NCBI RefSeq assembly: GCF_001447785.1
Contig: NW_015174867.1
Span: 1 to 64,000 of the forward strand
DNA: 64,000 bases
DNA from: Gekko japonicus
Taxonomy: Eukaryota
Direction: 5' to 3'
Both the position numbers and the translations under genes were made by a program. The notes under the pieces are model-generated. The model searched no databases. It was not told the DNA's origin and was given only the letters and a program-made list of their open reading frames with translations. This document shows positions 2,699 through 57,689 of the stretch, piece after piece (the stretch's first letter is position 1; every line of letters starts with the position of its first letter).

Positions 2699-2870
2699 CA
2701 GGGGTGTCGAACTCATTTGTTATGAAGGCCGGATCTGACACAAATGTTACTTTTCCAGGCCATGTATGCCATAAAATGTAATGCCACATACCGGAGATAT
2801 AAACTTTATAAAGGACTCAGGCAAACCCAATTAACAATATTATTTTTAATTCAAAATATAAACAAAAGCA
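2699..2870 (+). mobile_element. hAT-type MITE fragment
   Basis: Starts with CAGGGGTGTCGAACTCATTTG, a typical hAT/Charlie-like terminus. Confidence 0.55.
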
Positions 2871-3320
2871 ATTGATTCCTAGCAGTGAAAGCAATTGATT
2901 TACTGGGGAACCCATGAAAGCCCTAGTAAATGTATTTAATCATATGCAAGATGAGTTCCCCCCCCCCAAGGGATACCATAAAGGGGGGGGGGGTATTGTA
3001 CACTTCCATACAAATTAGATACTTTTAAAATATATACCACTTTTAGGAGATGAGTCATTGTCCTTGCAAGTAAATAAGGTAGTTTTTCAGAACCTCTCCG
3101 TACACCGAGCCTCAGCGGGTGAGCATGGCTACATCCCCATCCTGCCTCTGAGGATCTTGAGGAGACACACCAGATTCCCCACCAGCAACAGCCCTGTGAA
3201 GTGGGCCGGGCTGAGTGAGCAGCCCCAGGTGGCCCAGATGACAGGGTCCTGGCTCAGGAGGAGGGGGGATCTGAACCTGTCTCTTCCAGATCCCCCCCCC
3301 CCCATCCCCAGTTCTCATCC

Positions 3321-3560
3321 CAGTTTGGTGTAGTGGTTAAGAGTGGCAGACTCTAATCTGGAGAACCGGGTTTGATCCCCCCCTCCCCCAAATGCAGCCA
3401 GCTGAATGACCTTGGGTCAGTCACAGTTCTCTCTGAGCTGTTCTCTCAGAGCTCTCTCAGCCCCACCTTCCCCACAGGGTGTCTGTTGTGGGGAGAGGAA
3501 GGGAAGGAGACCTGGGACTCCCAAGTGAAGAGCGGGATATAAATCCAACTCTTCTTCTTC
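3321..3560 (+). mobile_element. tRNA-derived SINE (Squam3-like)
   Basis: A-box GGTGTAGTGGTTAAG, B-box-like GGTTTGATCCCC, conserved body and (CTT)n tail. Many similar copies in the window. Confidence 0.8.
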
Positions 3561-5796
3561 CCGCATTTCCCACAGAAGCGGTGAGGCTGAGGGAGTGCCT
3601 GATGGAGAGGTTGTTTCTGAACCCTCCAGGGAGTGCTTTTTGTTCTCCTCCAACCCCTTTTCCCTCATGGGCTGAGAAAAGGTGGGGGTGGGTGGAAGAA
3701 GGGAGGTCACCAATCCCCACCTGCCCCAACATTCTACCTCCTGGCTTTGCACCTCTTCAGACATGTGGTGCTCACACCCCCAGCCAGCCTCCAGCCTTCT
3801 CTCCCTCACACCAGTTGCTCGCGGGCCAGGTAAGAGCGCTGGATGGGCTGGATCTGGCCCCCGGGACTTATATTTGACACCCCTGCTCTAGATGCTTATC
3901 CCAGCACCCAGGTGGCTGTCAGCTGGACACCAAGCTGTCCACAGAGAAAAGAGAGTATAACCACTACAGTAGATGCCCAGGAAGAAAAAGAAGTTGGCCA
4001 GAGGGGGTGAGAGTGGTTTTACTCCCTTTCTCCATGGCCAGTTTAATGTCCTTCAGGTACCTTGGCAATCTCACTTTGTAGCGTTAGCTGCTATTTGTGA
4101 TGCCGGGGAGAGAGCAGAAGGCAGAGAGGCAAGGCCTTCCTCTCACTCCAGATACCCAAGGTTCAGCAGTGGTAGGGAGAGACAACCTTACATGCTGAGA
4201 AGTAGTCTTAATCCAGTACTTTAAAAGGTTATAGTGATATATTTAATATTAATGGTTATGTCTTCATTATTTTGTGAGTGTGTTTGTTGGGGAGGCTCAC
4301 AGGGCGTACAGTAGTCACGTGGCTCTTTGTGATTATGGTAGTTGTGAATGTGACTCTAACACTTCTGCACTAACACTTCTGCAGGGCTGGCCCAGCATGT
4401 TGCTTTATATTATGTTGGTGGAATGGTCAGGAGATAGAAGTGAGCACTGTTTTGCACACAGCAGAAACCCCAGATTTCCCACAGAATGTATGTTTTGTGA
4501 GTAGCTGCAGACAGCCATGGCTGTCTGTCAAGTGTACTTGTCTGATGCATGTCTTTGCAAAAATGTACTTATTGCATTAGTGCAGGTGCATTTCAAAAAT
4601 CTTAGATGTACAGCTGAAAGGGTAACATGTGAGATTATTTCAAGTGTTCAAATACTTTCCTTATCTCAGTGATCTTATAATGCAAGCCAGTGTCATTGAG
4701 CTGTTGAAGATAGGGGGTGAGATTAAGGGAATGGTAGCTTGCTGAAACCTTCCAGCGCTCAGTGGTGAGCAAAAACTAGATGTTTTCACTGCTCTTAAGG
4801 AGGGAAAGATCCACCAGTGAGCCTCTGATCAATTTCCAGCAGTTTGCGTAGTGTGTGCTAGAATTCTTGGTCTAATCCTGCAAGAAACTTCTCGTATTCC
4901 TTTGTAAAACTATACTTGGGATTAGTTAACACAGTTTGGCCTGGATATGCTATCTAGTTTTGCCAGTTTAAACGCAACAATGAGGTCTGGCCACCCTGCC
5001 CTCATGAGTGAGTGAGTAAGTCTTGAAATGAGGACTTTCGGACTCTGAGCTACGTGATATCCACTCCACTCTGTTATGCTTAACATGTTGCAATGGAATT
5101 TATTAAGGATCAGGGTATATGTATAATAATTTCTCGTTTTGAAATATTGCCTTTTACAGGCCTTGCAACAACAACAAAAGATATTTGTGTCTGCGACTGC
5201 AGTACAAATCACAGTGACTTGACCTACAGTGCAACTTATCAAAAGTTCTTGAGGCACCAGAATGTACCATAGTTTGCTGTGCTTGTCCTTGAGACAACAT
5301 TTTAAACAATTGTAAGTAGTGTTTGTGTAGTCAAGGTAACATAATGGATGTCTTATTCCTAAGGATGATAAAATAGTGATTGCATAGGAAGGGAGAGCAA
5401 ACTTAAATTGCATGGGATCATCTTCAGTGACAGTGTTCAGTTTAGGAGATTTGTAGTTTTGGTGAAGCCCACTGAAAACCTTGAAGATTTTAAACATGAG
5501 AGAATTGCCTTGCTGTATCAGACAAAGATCCATCTAGTCGAGCACTCAGTTGCCAAAAGCAGCCAGCTTTTTGCTTCTGGGAGATAACAGATAGGGCGAA
5601 GGCTTCCTCTCTTGGTAGTGGCCACCCAGCAGCTGTTATTCAGAAGTATACTGACTCATGGAAATTAATGATTATGGTTGATATGCACTAATAGATTAAC
5701 CTTTTAAGAAATGTGAAGTTAGATCTCTTAAAATGGGTTTGATACAGCTAGCTTTTTAATTCAGTCTCACCTAGTTCCCCTGCTTACTATGGTCCC

Positions 5797-8953: not shown

Positions 8954-9561
8954 TAGAGATGTAAAGGCCTGGGAAAAAAGGGAAAAATTCGGGGGGGGAA
9001 ACGTTTTTTTTCCTGAAGCCTTTTTTGTTTTTTCCCGAAAAATTGGAAAAATTGAAAAAAGAAAAGAAAAAAAAATGATTATGGAACGTTTTATTTTAGC
9101 ATGATGAATAAAATATTTTAAGACAAGGCGTTCAAATATTTTCCAAATCATTTCTAATATATATATATATATATATGGTATCTGATCTAATGTCTGTGCA
9201 CTGAGGACAAGCAAGTCCTAGGTTACAAACTGAACTCTCCAATGCAAGAACAAGATGCATTTCTTCCTTTAGGAGGTGCGATTGTCAGAAGAAAATTAAA
9301 AAGTTTCAGTTTTGTTTTTGCATGTGGTTGGGTATTCTATTTGTAATAATTGTTTGGATACACTATATTTTTAATATGCTCGTTGTGATAATTTCATGCC
9401 AAGTAAAAATGTCCATAGTCATATTTTATGTTCCTAAAGTAACAGAATGACTTTCAATCTAGAAAAGACAAAAGAAATGCTAATGTAGCATTTTTTTCAA
9501 TTTTTCCGAAAATCTTCGTTTTTTTCCCAGCTTCAAAATTTCCGGAAATTTTACATCTCTA
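8954..9561. mobile_element. Non-autonomous hAT DNA transposon
   Basis: TIRs TAGAGATGTAAA / TTTACATCTCTA. 8-bp TSD GTAGTTCT / GTCGTTCT (7/8). Confidence 0.8.
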
Positions 9562-15450: not shown

Positions 15451-15846
15451 ATGATGAACTTCCGCCAGAGGATGGGATGGATTGGTGTTGGATTATATCT
15501 AATAGCGAGTGCAGCAGCCTTTTACTACGTTTTCGAAATCAATGAGACTTATAACAGACTGGCACTGGAACATATACAGCAACCTCCTGAAAAACTCAGA
15601 GATGAAAGCACCTGGACACACTCCTTAAAAACGCGACTGCTGTCCTTGCCTTTTTGGCTGTGGGCTATTATCTTTCTAGTCCCCTATTTACAGATGTTCT
15701 TGTTCCTTTACTCCTGCACCAGAGCTGATCCCAAAACAGTGGGCTATTGCATCATTCCTATCTGCTTGGCTGTTGTTTGCAATCGTCACCAAACATTCGT
15801 GAAGGCCTCCAATCAAATCAGCAGACTGCAGTTGATTGACACTTAA
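15451..15846 (+). CDS. LYSET: Lysosomal enzyme trafficking factor (TMEM251/GCAF), 131 aa, single coding exon
   Basis: ORF MMNFRQRMGWIGVGLYL...NQISRLQLIDT closely matches the recalled vertebrate TMEM251 short isoform. Hydrophobic TM segments. Acceptor at 15434/15435. Expected neighbour of GON7/UBR7. Confidence 0.97.
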   Translation: MMNFRQRMGWIGVGLYLIASAAAFYYVFEINETYNRLALEHIQQPPEKLRDESTWTHSLKTRLLSLPFWLWAIIFLVPYLQMFLFLYSCTRADPKTVGYCIIPICLAVVCNRHQTFVKASNQISRLQLIDT

Positions 15847-48015: not shown

Positions 48016-48485
48016 CAGGTATGTTCAACAGGTAGATTGCGATCTACCAGTAGATCGCGGAGGGGTCAGAGGTAGATCACCAGCCCCACCCACTTGGTCT
48101 CACTAATGGTCTCACTAATGAGCAAGAGAAAAGTTTTAAAGTTTGTGCAAGAACAGCCTGGATCAATACTTGACCTACATTTAACACAAATAACTCTGAA
48201 TAAAAGTTAAAGAAAGTTATTGAGACAGTTAAAGAGAGTTATAACTCAATAAAAAAATGTTTGCAGTTCTTTCTGGATCTTCGTCTCTCTGTTTTGTTTT
48301 TGCTTATTTTGCTTACCAGTAAATGATAGAAGGTGCATTATAAATGGGGGGGGCGGGGCGGTGGAACCCAAATTTAGTGGGTTAAAATCTAATTTGAAAC
48401 TTTTTTTTTCATGGTGTTTTTTTCATCACCGGCAATTTTGGCCGTAAAAAATAGATCACTACCTGTTCGAAGTTGGACATGCCTG
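48016..48485. mobile_element. hAT MITE
   Basis: TIRs CAGGTATGTTCAAC / GTTGGACATGCCTG. Perfect 8-bp TSD GCCTAGCC. Confidence 0.85.
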
Positions 48486-52163: not shown

Positions 52164-53254
52164 GGCGTGGTTCTCAAAGTCCGAGAGTGGAGGAAGGAGA
52201 TGTTTTCTCCACACTAACAGAGCTGCTTCGGCCCATTCATGAAAGACTCGATGGCCTTAACCAATTGATTGCTGCTTCAAACCAGAGCATGGCAAAACAG
52301 CAACAGCAGATCACCGAGCTTCTGAAAAAATCGATCCAAACTGATGAAAAACTTAAAGAGACCACACATGATGCTAAAAAGCTGAAGAAAAGAGTTGGTC
52401 TGATGGAACAAAAGCAGGATCTACACGAAAGGAAGCTATTGAACCTACAAATGGACAAAGCGAATAAAACCCTTAGATTCCAAGGGGTGGCTGAGACGAC
52501 AGGAGAAATTTTGAAAGATGTGGCAGCTGAGCTAATCGCTCTATCGCTCGGCATTGCAACGGCTGAAGCGCATGCAGAGATAGAAGTGACATATCGTTCT
52601 TACTCTAAATATATTAAGCAAAACAAACTGCCGGGCAAGATCGTGGTCAAATTTCTCCGACGACAGACAAGAGATGATATTCTCAAAGCAACAGCAGACA
52701 AACCCCTGCAAATGGGATCAGCAAGTATCAGGGTCCTTAAGGACGTTCCATTTGAGGTTCGACAGAAAAGAAAAGCGTACAAAGAACTCATCTCAACACT
52801 TCAGATCAACCAAATTCAATACTCCTGGCTTTTTCCAGAAAGGGTCCAATTCAAATATAGAGACAAAAGAGAAAAAATCGACTCGGTGTTAAAAGCAGAA
52901 GAATGGTTGAAGCAATTCTTCGGACAGAAAGAGGAAGAGCAGCAAGACGGAGGAGGCCAGGCAGCTGACCTGGAAGAGACGGACAGAGACCTACTTGGAG
53001 CAGAAGGAGGCACGGCCAGAGAAGCATATGACTTGCGGCTAAGAGTTGCCAAATAGCACTTATGAACTAAAAAGACTTATGGATGAGCTGGAAGAAGTCT
53101 ATGTGCACACTGAGAAGAAATTAGATATACAACAAAATGGACTAACTAATCTCCTAAATTCCTTGACTTAATGAAAGCATTAATCTTTATAACTAACTGC
53201 ATACTAACTGTTAATGACCCTACTTTCTTGGGTTTTTAGTTATAGTGTGAAAAA
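52164..53254 (+). mobile_element. ORF1-only L1-derived retroelement (HAL1-like) with 17-bp TSD
   Basis: TSD AAGAATTCCCCCTTCTC at 52147-52163 and 53255-53271. Intact ORF1 frame, about 190 nt of 3' sequence, short A tract, no ORF2. Confidence 0.85.
52187..53056 (+). CDS. LINE-1 ORF1p-like RNA-binding protein (5'-truncated; first ATG at 52289)
   Basis: Coiled coil, then RRM (TLRFQGVAE...PGKIVVKF...RDDIL) and CTD (KDVPFEVRQKRKAY...YSWLFP), typical of L1 ORF1p/Transposase_22. Confidence 0.8.
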   Translation: MEEGDVFSTLTELLRPIHERLDGLNQLIAASNQSMAKQQQQITELLKKSIQTDEKLKETTHDAKKLKKRVGLMEQKQDLHERKLLNLQMDKANKTLRFQGVAETTGEILKDVAAELIALSLGIATAEAHAEIEVTYRSYSKYIKQNKLPGKIVVKFLRRQTRDDILKATADKPLQMGSASIRVLKDVPFEVRQKRKAYKELISTLQINQIQYSWLFPERVQFKYRDKREKIDSVLKAEEWLKQFFGQKEEEQQDGGGQAADLEETDRDLLGAEGGTAREAYDLRLRVAK

Positions 53255-54856: not shown

Positions 54857-55376
54857 AAGCTAGTTAAGTATATTTCAGCATAATAAAATGGTATGATATT
54901 TCAATGGATGTCCTCAAGACCAAACTTGCACATGATAATTAACACCAGGATGTAACTACAAGCTGCAAGACATAAGATGGTTCCTATGGAGCGCTGTCTA
55001 GCAACAACTTTAAATGAAAAATCTCATCAGAAGAGAACGGAGCCATTCCAAAGTTGAAACAATGCAACATAATTGAGTTAGTGAACTCTGTTCAAAAGCT
55101 GCATTACTAAGCATGTGTGATCAATGGGGCTTTTGACTTTTTCCCCTAACAGCAGACTCCACTCTATAGCAAACTGTTTTGGAAGTATGGAACTGATTTA
55201 GAAGCAAGCCATTCACAAAAAAATACGTCAGGAGGCCTGCTGGATGTGCAAGCCTCTAGAAATGCCTATGTTTTCTGAATTGTTACTTCCCAGGGCCTGC
55301 TAGCAGTTCTAACCATGTTCATATTATGCCCGTCCTGACAGTGCAGGTCAGTAATTCCAGTATTAATACCTCCAAG

Positions 55377-56315
55377 CAGGCCCGGAGCTAACGCGGGGCC
55401 CACCCTCCTCCCATTTCTTCTGGGCCCCCTCCCTCCTGGGCTGTCCCCTAAGTGCCTCAACTTACCACCTGCGCGCCACTTTGCACTCTGACTGAGAAAC
55501 ACCTCCACTTAAATCTTCTTCGGACTGCAAAGACCTGGGGTGGAAGACAGCCACACCTTTTTTTAACTTGGGGGCGTGTAATTTATGCAGGATGTCAAAA
55601 GCGGGAGGGGGGGAGAGAAGTGGCCTTCTGCCAAGCTGGGGATGCCACAGTGTGAAATTGACCAGCATGCTGAAACTGACTGGAAACCTCAAAGTCCTTT
55701 GCGAAACAAACACAAAACACAACAAGATTTTCTGGGAAAGGAAACAAAAGGAAAGGGAGATCGGAAGTGCTGAGCCAGAAAATACTTGGGGGGGGGGGGG
55801 GCAGACTAATTTTTAAAGTGCTTTCCTGGGCATCAGGCAGCTTCAGTAGACCTGGGTAAGACTCTGCTCGGGTCAGGGTTCCTGCAGAAATGGGGCCAAG
55901 TCAAAGGCAGAAAGGGAAAGTAGTTTAAAAAAAATGGAGAAAAGCTGAAAGGAAGGAAAAGGTAGCAGAAATGAAGGGACTGAAACGAAGGTGTTGAGGA
56001 AAGGGGACATCTCAGAAAGGGGGTCACCAGAAGAAAAGAGAAGAAAAGAAAAGACAAGTGTTTGGAGTGGCCGAGAGAGCACGTGGCTTGCCGCCACCGG
56101 CAGAGGGTTATCTATATTGGTGTAGCCGTACTTGCTAGCTATCCTCTTGGCTTCGGGGAGCCCACCACTTATCCTCACCGCCCAGTGGCTGGTGTATACG
56201 TGAGTCCTGCAGCTGCTGGGCATTACCCCCCATCCACCTGCTCTGGAAGTTTTGATTAAATTAGCTGCCACCCCCCCATGGCCCCCTCCCCAGAAAGTCC
56301 CTAGCTACAGGGCTG
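55377..56315. mobile_element. hAT-type non-autonomous transposon carrying captured host-gene fragments
   Basis: TIRs CAGGCCCGGAGCTA / reverse complement CAGCCCTGTAGCTA (11/14). 8-bp TSD CCTCCAAG / CCCCCAAG (7/8). GC-rich heterogeneous interior. Confidence 0.75.
56113..56211 (-). pseudogene. PCSK5: Captured fragment of PCSK5 exon 1 (proprotein convertase prodomain start)
   Basis: CRTHVYTSHWAVRISGGLPEAKRIASKYGYTNI versus recalled human PCSK5 CRTRVYTNHWAVKIAGGFPEANRIASKYGFINI. No other PCSK exons seen in the window. Confidence 0.85.
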
Positions 56316-57689
56316 CCCCCAAGCATCTCACTATTTCATAAATTCTAGAATCTCATATTCAGAAATTAGCCAAAACCAAAGGCATAAAGATTACCTAGAT
56401 TGTTGACATTATTCATGTAACTCCAAACATTTATTCCTTAAAGAACAAATGGTGGTTTCTCAGTTAAGCCCTTGTTTTAACAATTCTGTACTTCTAAACA
56501 AGCATTTTACATCATGCCTGATGATACTGTCTCATAAACAATAGTATATACTTCTGATAACTCCAAGAAAATACAATACAAATTTGCTGGAAGCAAAATT
56601 ACAAGAGTTTTCATACACACCCTATAGAATCATACTGAGCTGTGAGTATACAGTGCAAAAAAAAATGACCCACATAGCAAATTTAGTCATTTTACTTGTT
56701 ACATCAGTTCTAATAGAGAGAGTATGTTAAACAAAATATACCCTAAAAATCAATGGCTGGATGCCCCAGATCTATTTTGCCAATGGAGGTGTTTTTCTCT
56801 TGCAAAAGGAGCCCCCCCCCCCAAAGTAAGCACCTGCATTAGGAGATTAGGACTGCAGGATCCAATATAGTAGGATTCAATCCAGTAACTCCTAAGAGCT
56901 GTTACCAAGTCAAGACAAGAACCCCTAGACAGAGTTGGGGGGGAAACCCTAGCAATTTAAGATGGCAAAAATGACACCACTGATAAAAAGATAGCAGACA
57001 TATCAGAGTTTTAAAAGTTCTTGCACTTCATTTTTCATATACCAGTCCTCGAACTACAATACCATGTTTGACTACTAAAGAAAGGCAGTAAGAATACACT
57101 AGGTTTTTTGATTACAGAGGCCTGTTTAAATTTTCTACAGTGGTAGATTTTCTTTTAAAAGCCTCCCCCCCACTCAGGTCTTGGCTATATTCAGATGACC
57201 ATGAAGCCTTGGAAGACTATGGGCATATACATTCCCTACTGTCTCTACTCAAGTACTCCTCAAGAGTGCTCTTGAGGAGCAAAATTAAAAACATTTGTTG
57301 TTATATCCAAATCAAGCTCTCTAACAAACCATGACTTGTTTCTTGCACATAAATAATTATTTGTAGGTAAGAAAAAATACATTTGCTAAAGAACCCAATA
57401 AGGAAATCACAACAAACTGTAGTTAATTTTAAATCAAAAATATTTTCATTATCCATGTATTGGGGGAAGTTAACAGAGAAGTCAGTAGCTTCTATGGATC
57501 TGTTCAAGATGTCTGGATGATGATATAGGTAACTACTCTGAGTAAATAGTTATCACCAACCAGGAAAAAAACTCTTAACACTTATAAATGTGTTAATGCG
57601 GTGACCAAACCATTCAGAAACAAATACAGGCGAAATCAGATGCACGGATAAATGGAATTACTCTGATCATTATAGAAAGATAACTAGTA

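What the first reader, a model, noticed from the sequence alone, without database searches (positions are those of the whole stretch)
55377..56315. Pack-type DNA transposon carrying an in-frame piece of PCSK5 exon 1
Seen: a 939-bp element with TIRs and an 8-bp TSD (hAT signature) whose interior (56113-56211, minus strand) encodes 33 stop-free codons, CRTHVYTSHWAVRISGGLPEAKRIASKYGYTNI. Known: this matches the start of the PCSK5 prodomain, and Pack-MULEs in plants preferentially capture GC-rich 5' gene ends. Inference: transduplication of a host CpG-island exon by a reptile hAT element. Gene capture by TIR elements is rarely documented in vertebrates. The family may have spread this fragment genome-wide and may be a source of chimeric exons or antisense/small RNAs against PCSK5.
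Basis: partly seen in the sequence, partly recalled or inferred. Interest (0 to 1): 0.85.

Follow-up and report, generated by a model that had tools for sequence, protein, structure and literature searches.

The report
Mobile hAT transposon carrying PCSK5 exon piece
A 939-base non-autonomous hAT-type DNA transposon that picked up about 132 bases of the first coding exon of the protease gene PCSK5 has inserted here; a related species lacks this insertion, and read data indicate many other copies, which makes it a rare multi-copy vertebrate case of a known process (Pack-TIR gene capture).

Summary
The block 55377-56315 is a real insertion. A contig from a related species joins 55371 directly to 56319, which is an empty site with a single CCTCCAAG. 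The ends are short CAG...CTG inverted repeats flanked by an 8-bp duplication. Such a combination is expected about 0.1 times per window by chance.

The minus-strand stretch 56113-56211 passes Pfam's threshold for the Peptidase S8 pro-domain (28.9 bits against a cut-off of 25.5). Its best named relatives are PCSK5 at 77% identity, against 58-65% for PCSK6. No other PCSK5 exon is in the window, which holds TMEM251 instead.

Reads show three layers:
- The termini belong to a family of several hundred copies, mostly MITEs of roughly 165-175 bp.
- The interior is present at about 10-40 times.
- A few copies join 56110 to 56243, so they lack exactly the PCSK5 piece. This delimits a cargo of about 132 nt.

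The related species holds the same backbone-cargo-terminus chimera at another locus. Capture therefore came before the species split, and this insertion came after it. The cargo-bearing element transposed.

This is a new member of a known kind (Pack-TIR, Tan et al. 2021). It is notable because multicopy cases are very rare in vertebrates. There is no evidence of function.

The parts
55369..55376 (.). Left target-site duplication, CCTCCAAG
   Evidence: The related species has this 8-mer once at the empty site (joint 55371->56319).
55377..55393 (+). Left terminal inverted repeat (CAGGCCCGGAGCTAACG)
   Evidence: 11 of 14 ungapped matches to the right end. It occurs only once in the window.
55377..55472 (.). 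Left end shared with a high-copy short MITE family
   Evidence: DNA read depth is about 370-470 here, against 0 in the flanks. 508 reads leave the window sequence at 55472 with a common continuation (agreement 0.89). Joints 55472->56272/56280 with 29-37 other letters between define a canonical element of roughly 165-175 bp.
55473..56110 (.). Family backbone (internal non-coding sequence of the longer non-autonomous element)
   Evidence: depth is 8-45, with several deletion-derivative joints (55688->56271, 55521->56157). No Pfam match in any ORF. The canonical MITE middle looks like the two sides of this interior joined near 55512 and 56255.
56111..56242 (-). Captured PCSK5 exon-1 fragment (cargo, about 132 nt, GC 0.57)
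   Evidence: The limits come from copies lacking it: joints 56110->56243/56244 with 1-2 letters between, and 56091/56095->56243 with 16-17 divergent letters between, seen in X7, X14 and X13. Protein similarity covers 56229-56112.
56113..56211 (-).
56243..56315 (.). Right end shared with the MITE family, including the right TIR at 56299-56315
   Evidence: depth is about 100, and loose ends at 56315/56316 run into unrelated flanks (agreement 0.34-0.40). One search places the TIR.
56316..56323 (.). Right target-site duplication, CCCCCAAG (one change from the left copy)
55873..56271 (-). 132-codon open frame across right end, cargo and backbone; probably fortuitous
   Evidence: Only residues 29-56 match any family. 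The 5.8-billion-protein set holds no relatives of the rest.

Best explanation
This is one copy of a mobile, non-autonomous hAT-type DNA transposon of the Pack-TIR (Pack-hAT) kind.

Its roughly 800-bp backbone acquired about 132 nt from inside the first coding exon of PCSK5. The likely route is template switching during double-strand-break or gap repair, or during replication.

The chimera was then mobilised in trans by a hAT transposase. It amplified to roughly ten to a few tens of copies and gave rise to deletion derivatives. The family's termini are also shared with a short MITE of several hundred copies.

The copy in the window inserted at CCTCCAAG, far from PCSK5 and about 40 kb from TMEM251, after the lineage split from the related species sampled.

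The fragment encodes only the end of the signal peptide and about a third of the prodomain. It has no start codon of the gene and no splice donor, so it is most likely inert passenger DNA.

Shown: the insertion, the TSD and TIRs, the PCSK5 identity of the fragment, the multicopy state, and the same chimera at another locus in the sister species.

Inferred: the hAT superfamily, the capture mechanism, and the lack of function.
For: Empty site. The related species has a single target copy and no footprint (joint 55371->56319, side 255, one contig at the single-copy depth of 29.5).

TIR and TSD. The combination is far above chance: 4 found against 0.1 expected per window, and the other 3 look like ordinary hAT MITEs.

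PCSK5 identity.
- Pfam S8_pro-domain scores above its gathering cut-off.
- phmmer gives 75 hits with a best E of 5.6e-12, all over the same 35 residues.
- The clusters named PCSK5 are 77% (birds) and 66% (one JGI-named cluster) identical; those named PCSK6 are 58% and 65% identical.

Isolated fragment. A full-length PCSK5 of 1864 aa gives only this one significant HSP in the window. The window instead carries an intact TMEM251 ORF.

Multicopy state.
- DNA read depth is 24-37 on the cargo and 8-45 on the backbone, against 0 on the flanks, from about 1.9 Gb of reads.
- 6-7 contigs of the related species cover cargo positions 56146 and 56197.

Same chimera elsewhere. X7 record 15 (2517 nt) covers 56063-56314 continuously, running through backbone, cargo and terminus, and then continues for 2260 nt of unrelated flank.

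Copies without cargo. Joints 56110->56243/56244 were seen in two species and three runs.

Shared descent from PCSK5. 22 of 23 reads have G at 56146, giving Asn as in PCSK5. The window's Lys is therefore a private change.

Fit to the literature. The multicopy animal Pack-TIRs reported so far lay far from their parent genes and tended to carry GC-rich cargo, and the median cargo across all animal Pack-TIRs was 224 bp (PMC8277862).
Against: - Direction of transfer, exact breakpoints and microhomology therefore rest on inference.
- The joints that define cargo-less copies have short sides (21-26 letters) and few reads. They could be deletion derivatives rather than the ancestral form.
- Copy number is estimated from one low-coverage read sample. 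Its flanks show 0 reads where about 5 were expected, so the single-copy baseline is uncertain.
- Logan contigs collapse repeats, so contig counts are imprecise.
- The fifth base of the TIR departs from the usual hAT YARNG motif.
- No transposase partner was identified.
- Weak matches just past the exon end (NPL, SRPL) in read-through ORFs of other species leave a small chance that some intron 1 sequence was captured as well.
Confidence: 0.8

Rival explanations
1. Transposition-independent patch. A hAT element already sitting at this locus suffered a break, and the break was filled with PCSK5 sequence. This would be a single-copy gap-filling Pack-TIR, the commonest kind in animals.
For: Tan et al. 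2021 find that most animal Pack-TIRs arise this way. An earlier follow-up in this same genome reached that verdict for a BMPR2 exon copy in a MITE (s1-835267).
Against: The related species lacks the whole element at this site, not just the cargo. It also holds the same chimera at another locus. Depth on the cargo is 24-37 against 0 on the flanks. The parent gene is not nearby, whereas gap-filling cases show a strong cis bias.
Confidence: 0.05
2. The element is real and mobile, but the cargo-bearing form is low-copy (2-3 copies). On this reading, most reads on 56111-56242 come from PCSK5 itself, from paralogues, or from an unrelated repeat.
For: The single-copy baseline in X14 is uncertain because the flanks show 0 reads. 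91% of laid reads run on into unlike sequence. min_likeness was set to 80.
Against: A parent gene plus paralogues would add about 1-3 times depth, not 24-37 times. Depth is continuous from backbone into cargo. No strong loose-end pile-up at 56111 or 56242 appears among the best-supported rows. A deletion derivative (55521->56157, 5 reads) retains half of the cargo joined to the family's left part. Seven contigs in the sister species cover the cargo.
Confidence: 0.1
3. Not a transposon cargo at all. The stretch would be a decayed exon or a processed pseudogene of a proprotein convertase, lying by chance between inverted repeats.
For: The stretch is open for 132 codons.
Against: Only 35-39 residues are homologous. 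There is no poly(A), no other exon and no start of the gene. The whole 939 bp is absent from the orthologous site of the related species, with a clean single target. The termini are a repeat of several hundred copies.
Confidence: 0.02

Closest known systems
Multicopy Pack-TIRs of vertebrates, e.g. Pack-hAT-N8_XT carrying 291 bp of the CAPSL 5'UTR in Xenopus tropicalis (Tan et al. 2021, Nat Commun 12:4280, PMC8277862)
   Same: Both are non-autonomous hAT elements with a short, GC-rich slice of a host gene's 5' region. Both are amplified by transposition to sites far from the parent gene. In both, the element is absent from the orthologous site in an outgroup.
   Different: The cargo here is coding exon sequence rather than UTR. 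The host is, per the scan's own notes, a squamate reptile. Copy number appears to be tens rather than three. Putative pre-capture copies of the backbone are still detectable, which the frog and alligator cases lacked.
Pack-MULEs and Pack-TYPE elements of plants (rice Pack-MULEs; Pack-CACTA; survey in PMC8903248)
   Same: TIR elements carry gene fragments, favour GC-rich 5' parts of genes, and amplify the chimera.
   Different: The superfamily differs: hAT-like with an 8-bp TSD and roughly 14-17-nt TIRs, against Mutator with 9-10-bp TSDs and long TIRs. There is one small fragment and no multi-gene chimera. There is no evidence of expression or of siRNA.
Single-copy gap-filling Pack-TIRs of animals (Tan et al. 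2021), and the BMPR2-exon-in-MITE case noted earlier in this genome (s1-835267)
   Same: A host exon piece lies inside a hAT MITE, and the likely molecular step is template switching during repair.
   Different: Those cases arose in place and never moved. Here the chimera is absent from the orthologous site of a relative and present at other loci.

Membership tests
hAT superfamily (non-autonomous member) | 8-bp target-site duplication | tested here: met
   The repeats are CCTCCAAG and CCCCCAAG. The related species has the 8-mer once at the empty site. Only this one copy's TSD could be read.
hAT superfamily (non-autonomous member) | Short TIRs (about 10-25 bp) beginning with the YARNG motif | tested here: inconclusive
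   The TIRs are about 14-17 nt and start CAGGC and CAGCC. The first three bases fit, but the fifth is C rather than G.
hAT superfamily (non-autonomous member) | Autonomous partner encoding a hAT transposase (BED finger, DDE domain, hAT dimerisation domain) with matching ends | not testable with these tools
Pack-TIR (gene-fragment-carrying TIR element) | Both TIRs and the TSD of a repeated TIR family enclose the fragment | tested here: met
   The termini are shared with a family of several hundred copies, and the ends lie exactly at 55377 and 56315.
Pack-TIR (gene-fragment-carrying TIR element) | The internal segment derives from a host gene whose parental copy lies elsewhere | tested here: met
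   The S8 pro-domain match is above cut-off. PCSK5 is the closest named paralogue. No other PCSK5 exon lies in the 64-kb window, which holds TMEM251. A DNA-level comparison with this genome's own PCSK5 was not possible.
Pack-TIR (gene-fragment-carrying TIR element) | No transposase of its own | tested here: met
   The element is 939 bp, and no Pfam family other than the cargo matches any ORF.
Multicopy (transposition-dependent) Pack-TIR | Several copies of the same chimera at different loci, and absence at the orthologous site of an outgroup | tested here: met
   Empty site in organism B. The same chimera occurs in a 2517-nt contig of organism B with different flanks. Depth on the cargo is 24-37, and 6-7 contigs cover it. 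The distinct TSDs of the other copies could not be read.
PCSK5 (proprotein convertase 5) as source gene | Closer to PCSK5 than to the other convertase paralogues over the matched residues | tested here: met
   Identity is 77% (birds) and 66% (one JGI-named cluster) to clusters named PCSK5, and up to 80-81% to unnamed exon-1 ORFs. It is 58% and 65% to the clusters named PCSK6, and the match to PC1/3 in the PDB is at E 0.85.

The most novel reading that the evidence does not exclude
This genome hosts a recently active hAT family that behaves like plant Pack-MULEs. On this reading it repeatedly takes up GC-rich first-exon pieces and amplifies the chimeras to tens of copies. The captures would include PCSK5 here and, by unchecked first-reader notes elsewhere in the genome, GLUD1, PTPN1, MTARC, BCL2L10 and others. 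That would be the first high-copy, recurrent Pack-TIR system described in a vertebrate. It would also be a tractable case in which pre-capture backbone, chimera and parent gene all survive, so the capture mechanism could be read from the junctions.
Probability: 0.25. Interest if true: 0.7.

Novelty: new member of a known kind. Interest (0 to 1): 0.45.

Why it matters
Gene-fragment capture by cut-and-paste transposons is a major route of exon shuffling in plants. In animals it has been seen almost only as one-off repair patches. Among 100 animal genomes, only four Pack-TIRs were multicopy (PMC8277862).

This case shows a vertebrate element that carried a coding-exon piece through later rounds of transposition. 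Apparent pre-capture relatives still exist in the genome, and the insertion is dated against a sister species by its empty site.

With the full assembly, three things could be tested. The first is how the fragment was acquired, from junction microhomology and from comparison of gap repair against replication-fork switching. The second is how often this family does it. The third is whether tens of dispersed PCSK5-homologous segments have any effect on PCSK5, for example through antisense or small RNAs or ectopic recombination.

By itself the copy looks functionally inert.

Tried and rejected
1. RNA-mediated capture. The cargo seemed to end at the exon-1 boundary. It does not. Read-through ORFs from many vertebrates place the donor after ...NIGQ, and the homology stops 5 nt earlier.

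2. Extension of the capture into intron 1. tblastn with read-through ORFs gives only NPL and SRPL matches beyond the exon, and these add no score. I treat this as chance, but it is not excluded.

4. Other Pack copies among predicted proteins. A search with the 132-aa ORF found only two true PCSK5 exon-1 ORFs.

5. Longer TIRs or subterminal repeats. The best local alignment of the two 150-nt ends is no better than shuffles.

6. Other copies of the element or its TIRs in the window. There are none.

7. Rfam at gathering thresholds on the whole window. No match.

8. Pfam on nine other ORFs of the element. No match.

9. PDB sequence search. Only marginal PC1/3 prodomain matches, at E about 1.

10. 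Earlier-findings look-ups by sequence. Blank.

11. Mammal-like hits. Some protein hits (P0012-P0016) look mammalian. I fetched their sequences with the other hits and they went into one local tblastn batch against the window with all other fetched proteins. I did not pursue them further.

Full report
**What is there**

A 939-bp block is richer in G+C (0.52) than the window (0.42). It begins CAGGCCCGGAGCTA and ends with the reverse complement of CAGCCCTGTAGCTA, matching at 11 of 14 positions. It is flanked by CCTCCAAG and CCCCCAAG. The inverted similarity does not extend significantly beyond about 17 nt.

I scanned the whole window for the same combination: an 8-bp direct repeat with at most one mismatch, next to 14-nt inverted termini with at least 11 matches that start CAG or TAG, 200-3000 bp apart. 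The window has four such cases, against a mean of 0.1 in 20 Markov shuffles. The other three look like ordinary hAT MITEs, so the signature is not a chance pattern.

**It is an insertion**

Contigs of a related species (organism B, run X7) were laid on 54950-56750. One 1816-nt contig matches 54972-55371 and then continues at 56319-56750. It skips 947 bases and keeps a single copy of the target octamer.
- The flanks differ by about 7%, so this is a different species and not the source of the window.
- No footprint is present, which points to a site that was never occupied rather than to an excision.
- In the DNA reads of the window's own species (X14), 151 reads leave the sequence exactly at 56315/56316 and go into mutually unrelated sequence.
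- Contigs of X3 begin to match at 55376.

**The coding piece is PCSK5**

The 33 codons on the minus strand of 56113-56211 match Pfam's Peptidase S8 pro-domain over profile positions 1-26 of 79. The score is 28.9 bits, above the curated cut-off of 25.5.

A 46-residue query was run through phmmer against 1.84 billion representative proteins. It gave 75 hits at E of 0.001 or better, with a best E of 5.6e-12, and all of them align to the same 35 residues.
- Clusters that carry names are PCSK5 at 77% identity (three bird proteins of 1832-1898 aa), a JGI protein named PCSK5 at 66%, and PCSK6 at 58% and 65%.
- Many hits are short ORFs called on genomic contigs. They read through the end of exon 1 as ...NIGQ followed by V and then unrelated residues. 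Spliced products read ...NIGQIG.LKDYYHF.
- Exon 1 therefore ends after the Gln codon, and the homology in the window stops 5 nt short of that.
- Upstream, similarity runs to about 56229, which is the last residues of the signal peptide.
- A full-length PCSK5 gives no other significant match anywhere in the 64 kb.
- The window instead carries a complete TMEM251 ORF at 15451-15846.
- The fragment is therefore an isolated slice of exon 1 at a foreign locus.

**Anatomy of the family, from the reads**

About 1.9 Gb of raw DNA reads of the same species give depth 0 on both flanks. Depth is about 370-470 on 55377-55498 and about 100 on 56231-56352. Across the interior it is 8-45, and on the PCSK5 piece 24-37.
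- The high-copy form is a short MITE. Hundreds of reads leave the window sequence at 55472 with a common continuation. Joints connect 55472 to 56272/56280 with 29-37 other letters between.
- That middle segment resembles the two sides of the window's interior joined near 55512 and 56255. The MITE therefore looks like an internal-deletion derivative of the longer element.
- Other deletion derivatives are seen: 55688->56271 in 7 DNA and 2 RNA reads, and 55521->56157 in 5 reads. The second keeps half of the PCSK5 piece.
- A few reads and contigs join 56110 directly to 56243/56244 with one or two letters between. Equivalent joints run from 56091/56095 to 56243 with 16-17 divergent letters that correspond to 56092-56110.
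- These joints come from three runs and two species. They are copies of the backbone without the PCSK5 piece, and they delimit the cargo as 56111-56242 (132 nt, G+C 0.57).
- Their shorter sides are only 21-26 letters, so I treat this as good but not conclusive evidence for a surviving pre-capture form.

**The chimera moved**

In organism B, a 2517-nt contig matches 56063-56314 continuously, running through backbone, cargo and right end at about 82-86% identity. It then runs for 2260 nt into sequence unlike the window.
- Six to seven contigs of that species cover positions inside the cargo.
- The capture therefore predates the split of the two species, whereas the insertion in the window postdates it. 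The cargo-bearing element must have transposed after capture.
- Some reads over the cargo differ from the window at only 2-3 further positions per 150 nt, so close relatives exist.
- At 56146, 22 of 23 reads carry G. That turns the window's Lys codon into Asn, the residue PCSK5 has there. This fits descent of all copies from one PCSK5-derived capture, with private decay in this copy.

**Mechanism**

- Shown: a non-autonomous TIR element with an 8-bp TSD, a 132-nt exon-derived insert, amplification, and lineage-specific insertion.
- Inferred, superfamily: hAT, from the 8-bp TSD, the short CAG...CTG ends, and the abundance of hAT MITEs in the same window. The fifth TIR base departs from the usual motif, and no transposase partner could be sought.
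- Inferred, capture step: template switching during repair or replication, as proposed for animal Pack-TIRs (PMC8277862).
- This case resembles that paper's transposition-dependent multicopy class in three ways: the parent is distal, the cargo is GC-rich, and the element is absent from the outgroup's orthologous site.
- The junctions cannot be analysed without the parent locus.

**Function**

- The fragment lacks the gene's start codon, most of the signal peptide, two thirds of the prodomain and the splice donor.
- The 132-codon frame that crosses it has no relatives outside the PCSK5 part.
- In the RNA run X13, the flanks of this copy have no reads and the cargo has a depth of 0.6-3. RNA reads pile up only on the MITE end, and first mates fall on both strands. 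There is no sign that this copy is expressed, and no basis for a strand-specific claim.

**Comparison and novelty**

Pack-TIRs are documented in animals: 370 in 100 genomes, of which 208 are hAT, with a median cargo of 224 bp and 13.4% exonic. Only four were multicopy, three in Xenopus tropicalis and one in alligator (PMC8277862). Full-text searches turned up no study of Pack-TIR capture in squamates or other reptiles beyond that paper.

This is therefore a new member of a known kind. It has the uncommon features of a coding cargo, an apparent copy number in the tens, and surviving cargo-less relatives.

First-reader notes elsewhere in this genome list many similar candidates: GLUD1, PTPN1, MTARC and BCL2L10 first exons, with 64 notes fitting 'Pack captur'. 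One follow-up judged a BMPR2 case a one-off repair patch. I did not test any of these, and they are not independent evidence. They do raise the possibility of a genome-wide phenomenon, which is the novel reading I score separately.

**Caveats**

- Copy numbers rest on one low-coverage sample. Its flanks unexpectedly show no reads at all, where about five were expected at 1x coverage.
- Logan contigs collapse repeats.
- min_likeness was 80, so some laid reads may be distant relatives.
- The TSDs of other copies were not readable.
- The look-up of sequencing runs and read laying allow one call each, so none of this could be repeated on other runs.

Noticed in passing
window 15451-15846 (+): An intact 131-codon ORF matches the whole Pfam TMEM251 model (E 3.8e-73). 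The window is therefore the TMEM251 neighbourhood, not the PCSK5 locus.
   Followed up: partly
window 2699-3885, 8954-9561, 48016-48485: Three further TIR-plus-8-bp-TSD elements turned up in the same scan. Their TSDs are CTCTAGAT (perfect), GTAGTTCT/GTCGTTCT, and GCCTAGCC (perfect). Their TIRs start CAGGGGTGTC, TAGAGATGTAAA and CAGGTATGTTCAAC. They are probably ordinary hAT MITEs of other families. The first holds two ORFs of about 130 codons; the one I tested (3479-3877, + strand) has no Pfam match.
   Followed up: partly
window 55450-55461 (minus strand), inside the high-copy MITE end: The minus strand reads CAGGTGGTAAGT, a near-consensus 5' splice site, within the part of the MITE that has by far the highest RNA read depth (about 100-150 in X13). 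Exonisation of this MITE family in transcripts may be worth a look.
   Followed up: no
window 54950-55376 and 56353-56750 (flanks), run X14: About 1.9 Gb of genomic reads of the same species label put no read on roughly 850 nt of unique flank, where about five were expected. Six reads match the element at 99% or more. This is unexplained: it could be chance, a larger genome, or a filter.
   Followed up: no
window 52187-53056 (+): This 289-codon ORF lies within the stretch another note calls an ORF1-only L1 retrocopy. Pfam gives only a weak coiled-coil-type match (CENP-H, E 0.004), so the L1 ORF1 identity was not verified here.
   Followed up: partly
window 55792-55802 and 56268-56276: A G11 run and a C-rich run inside the element form a 13-nt inverted pair (92% complementary, 460 nt apart). 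Homopolymer-rich spots like these could be fragile sites where breaks and template switches occur.
   Followed up: no
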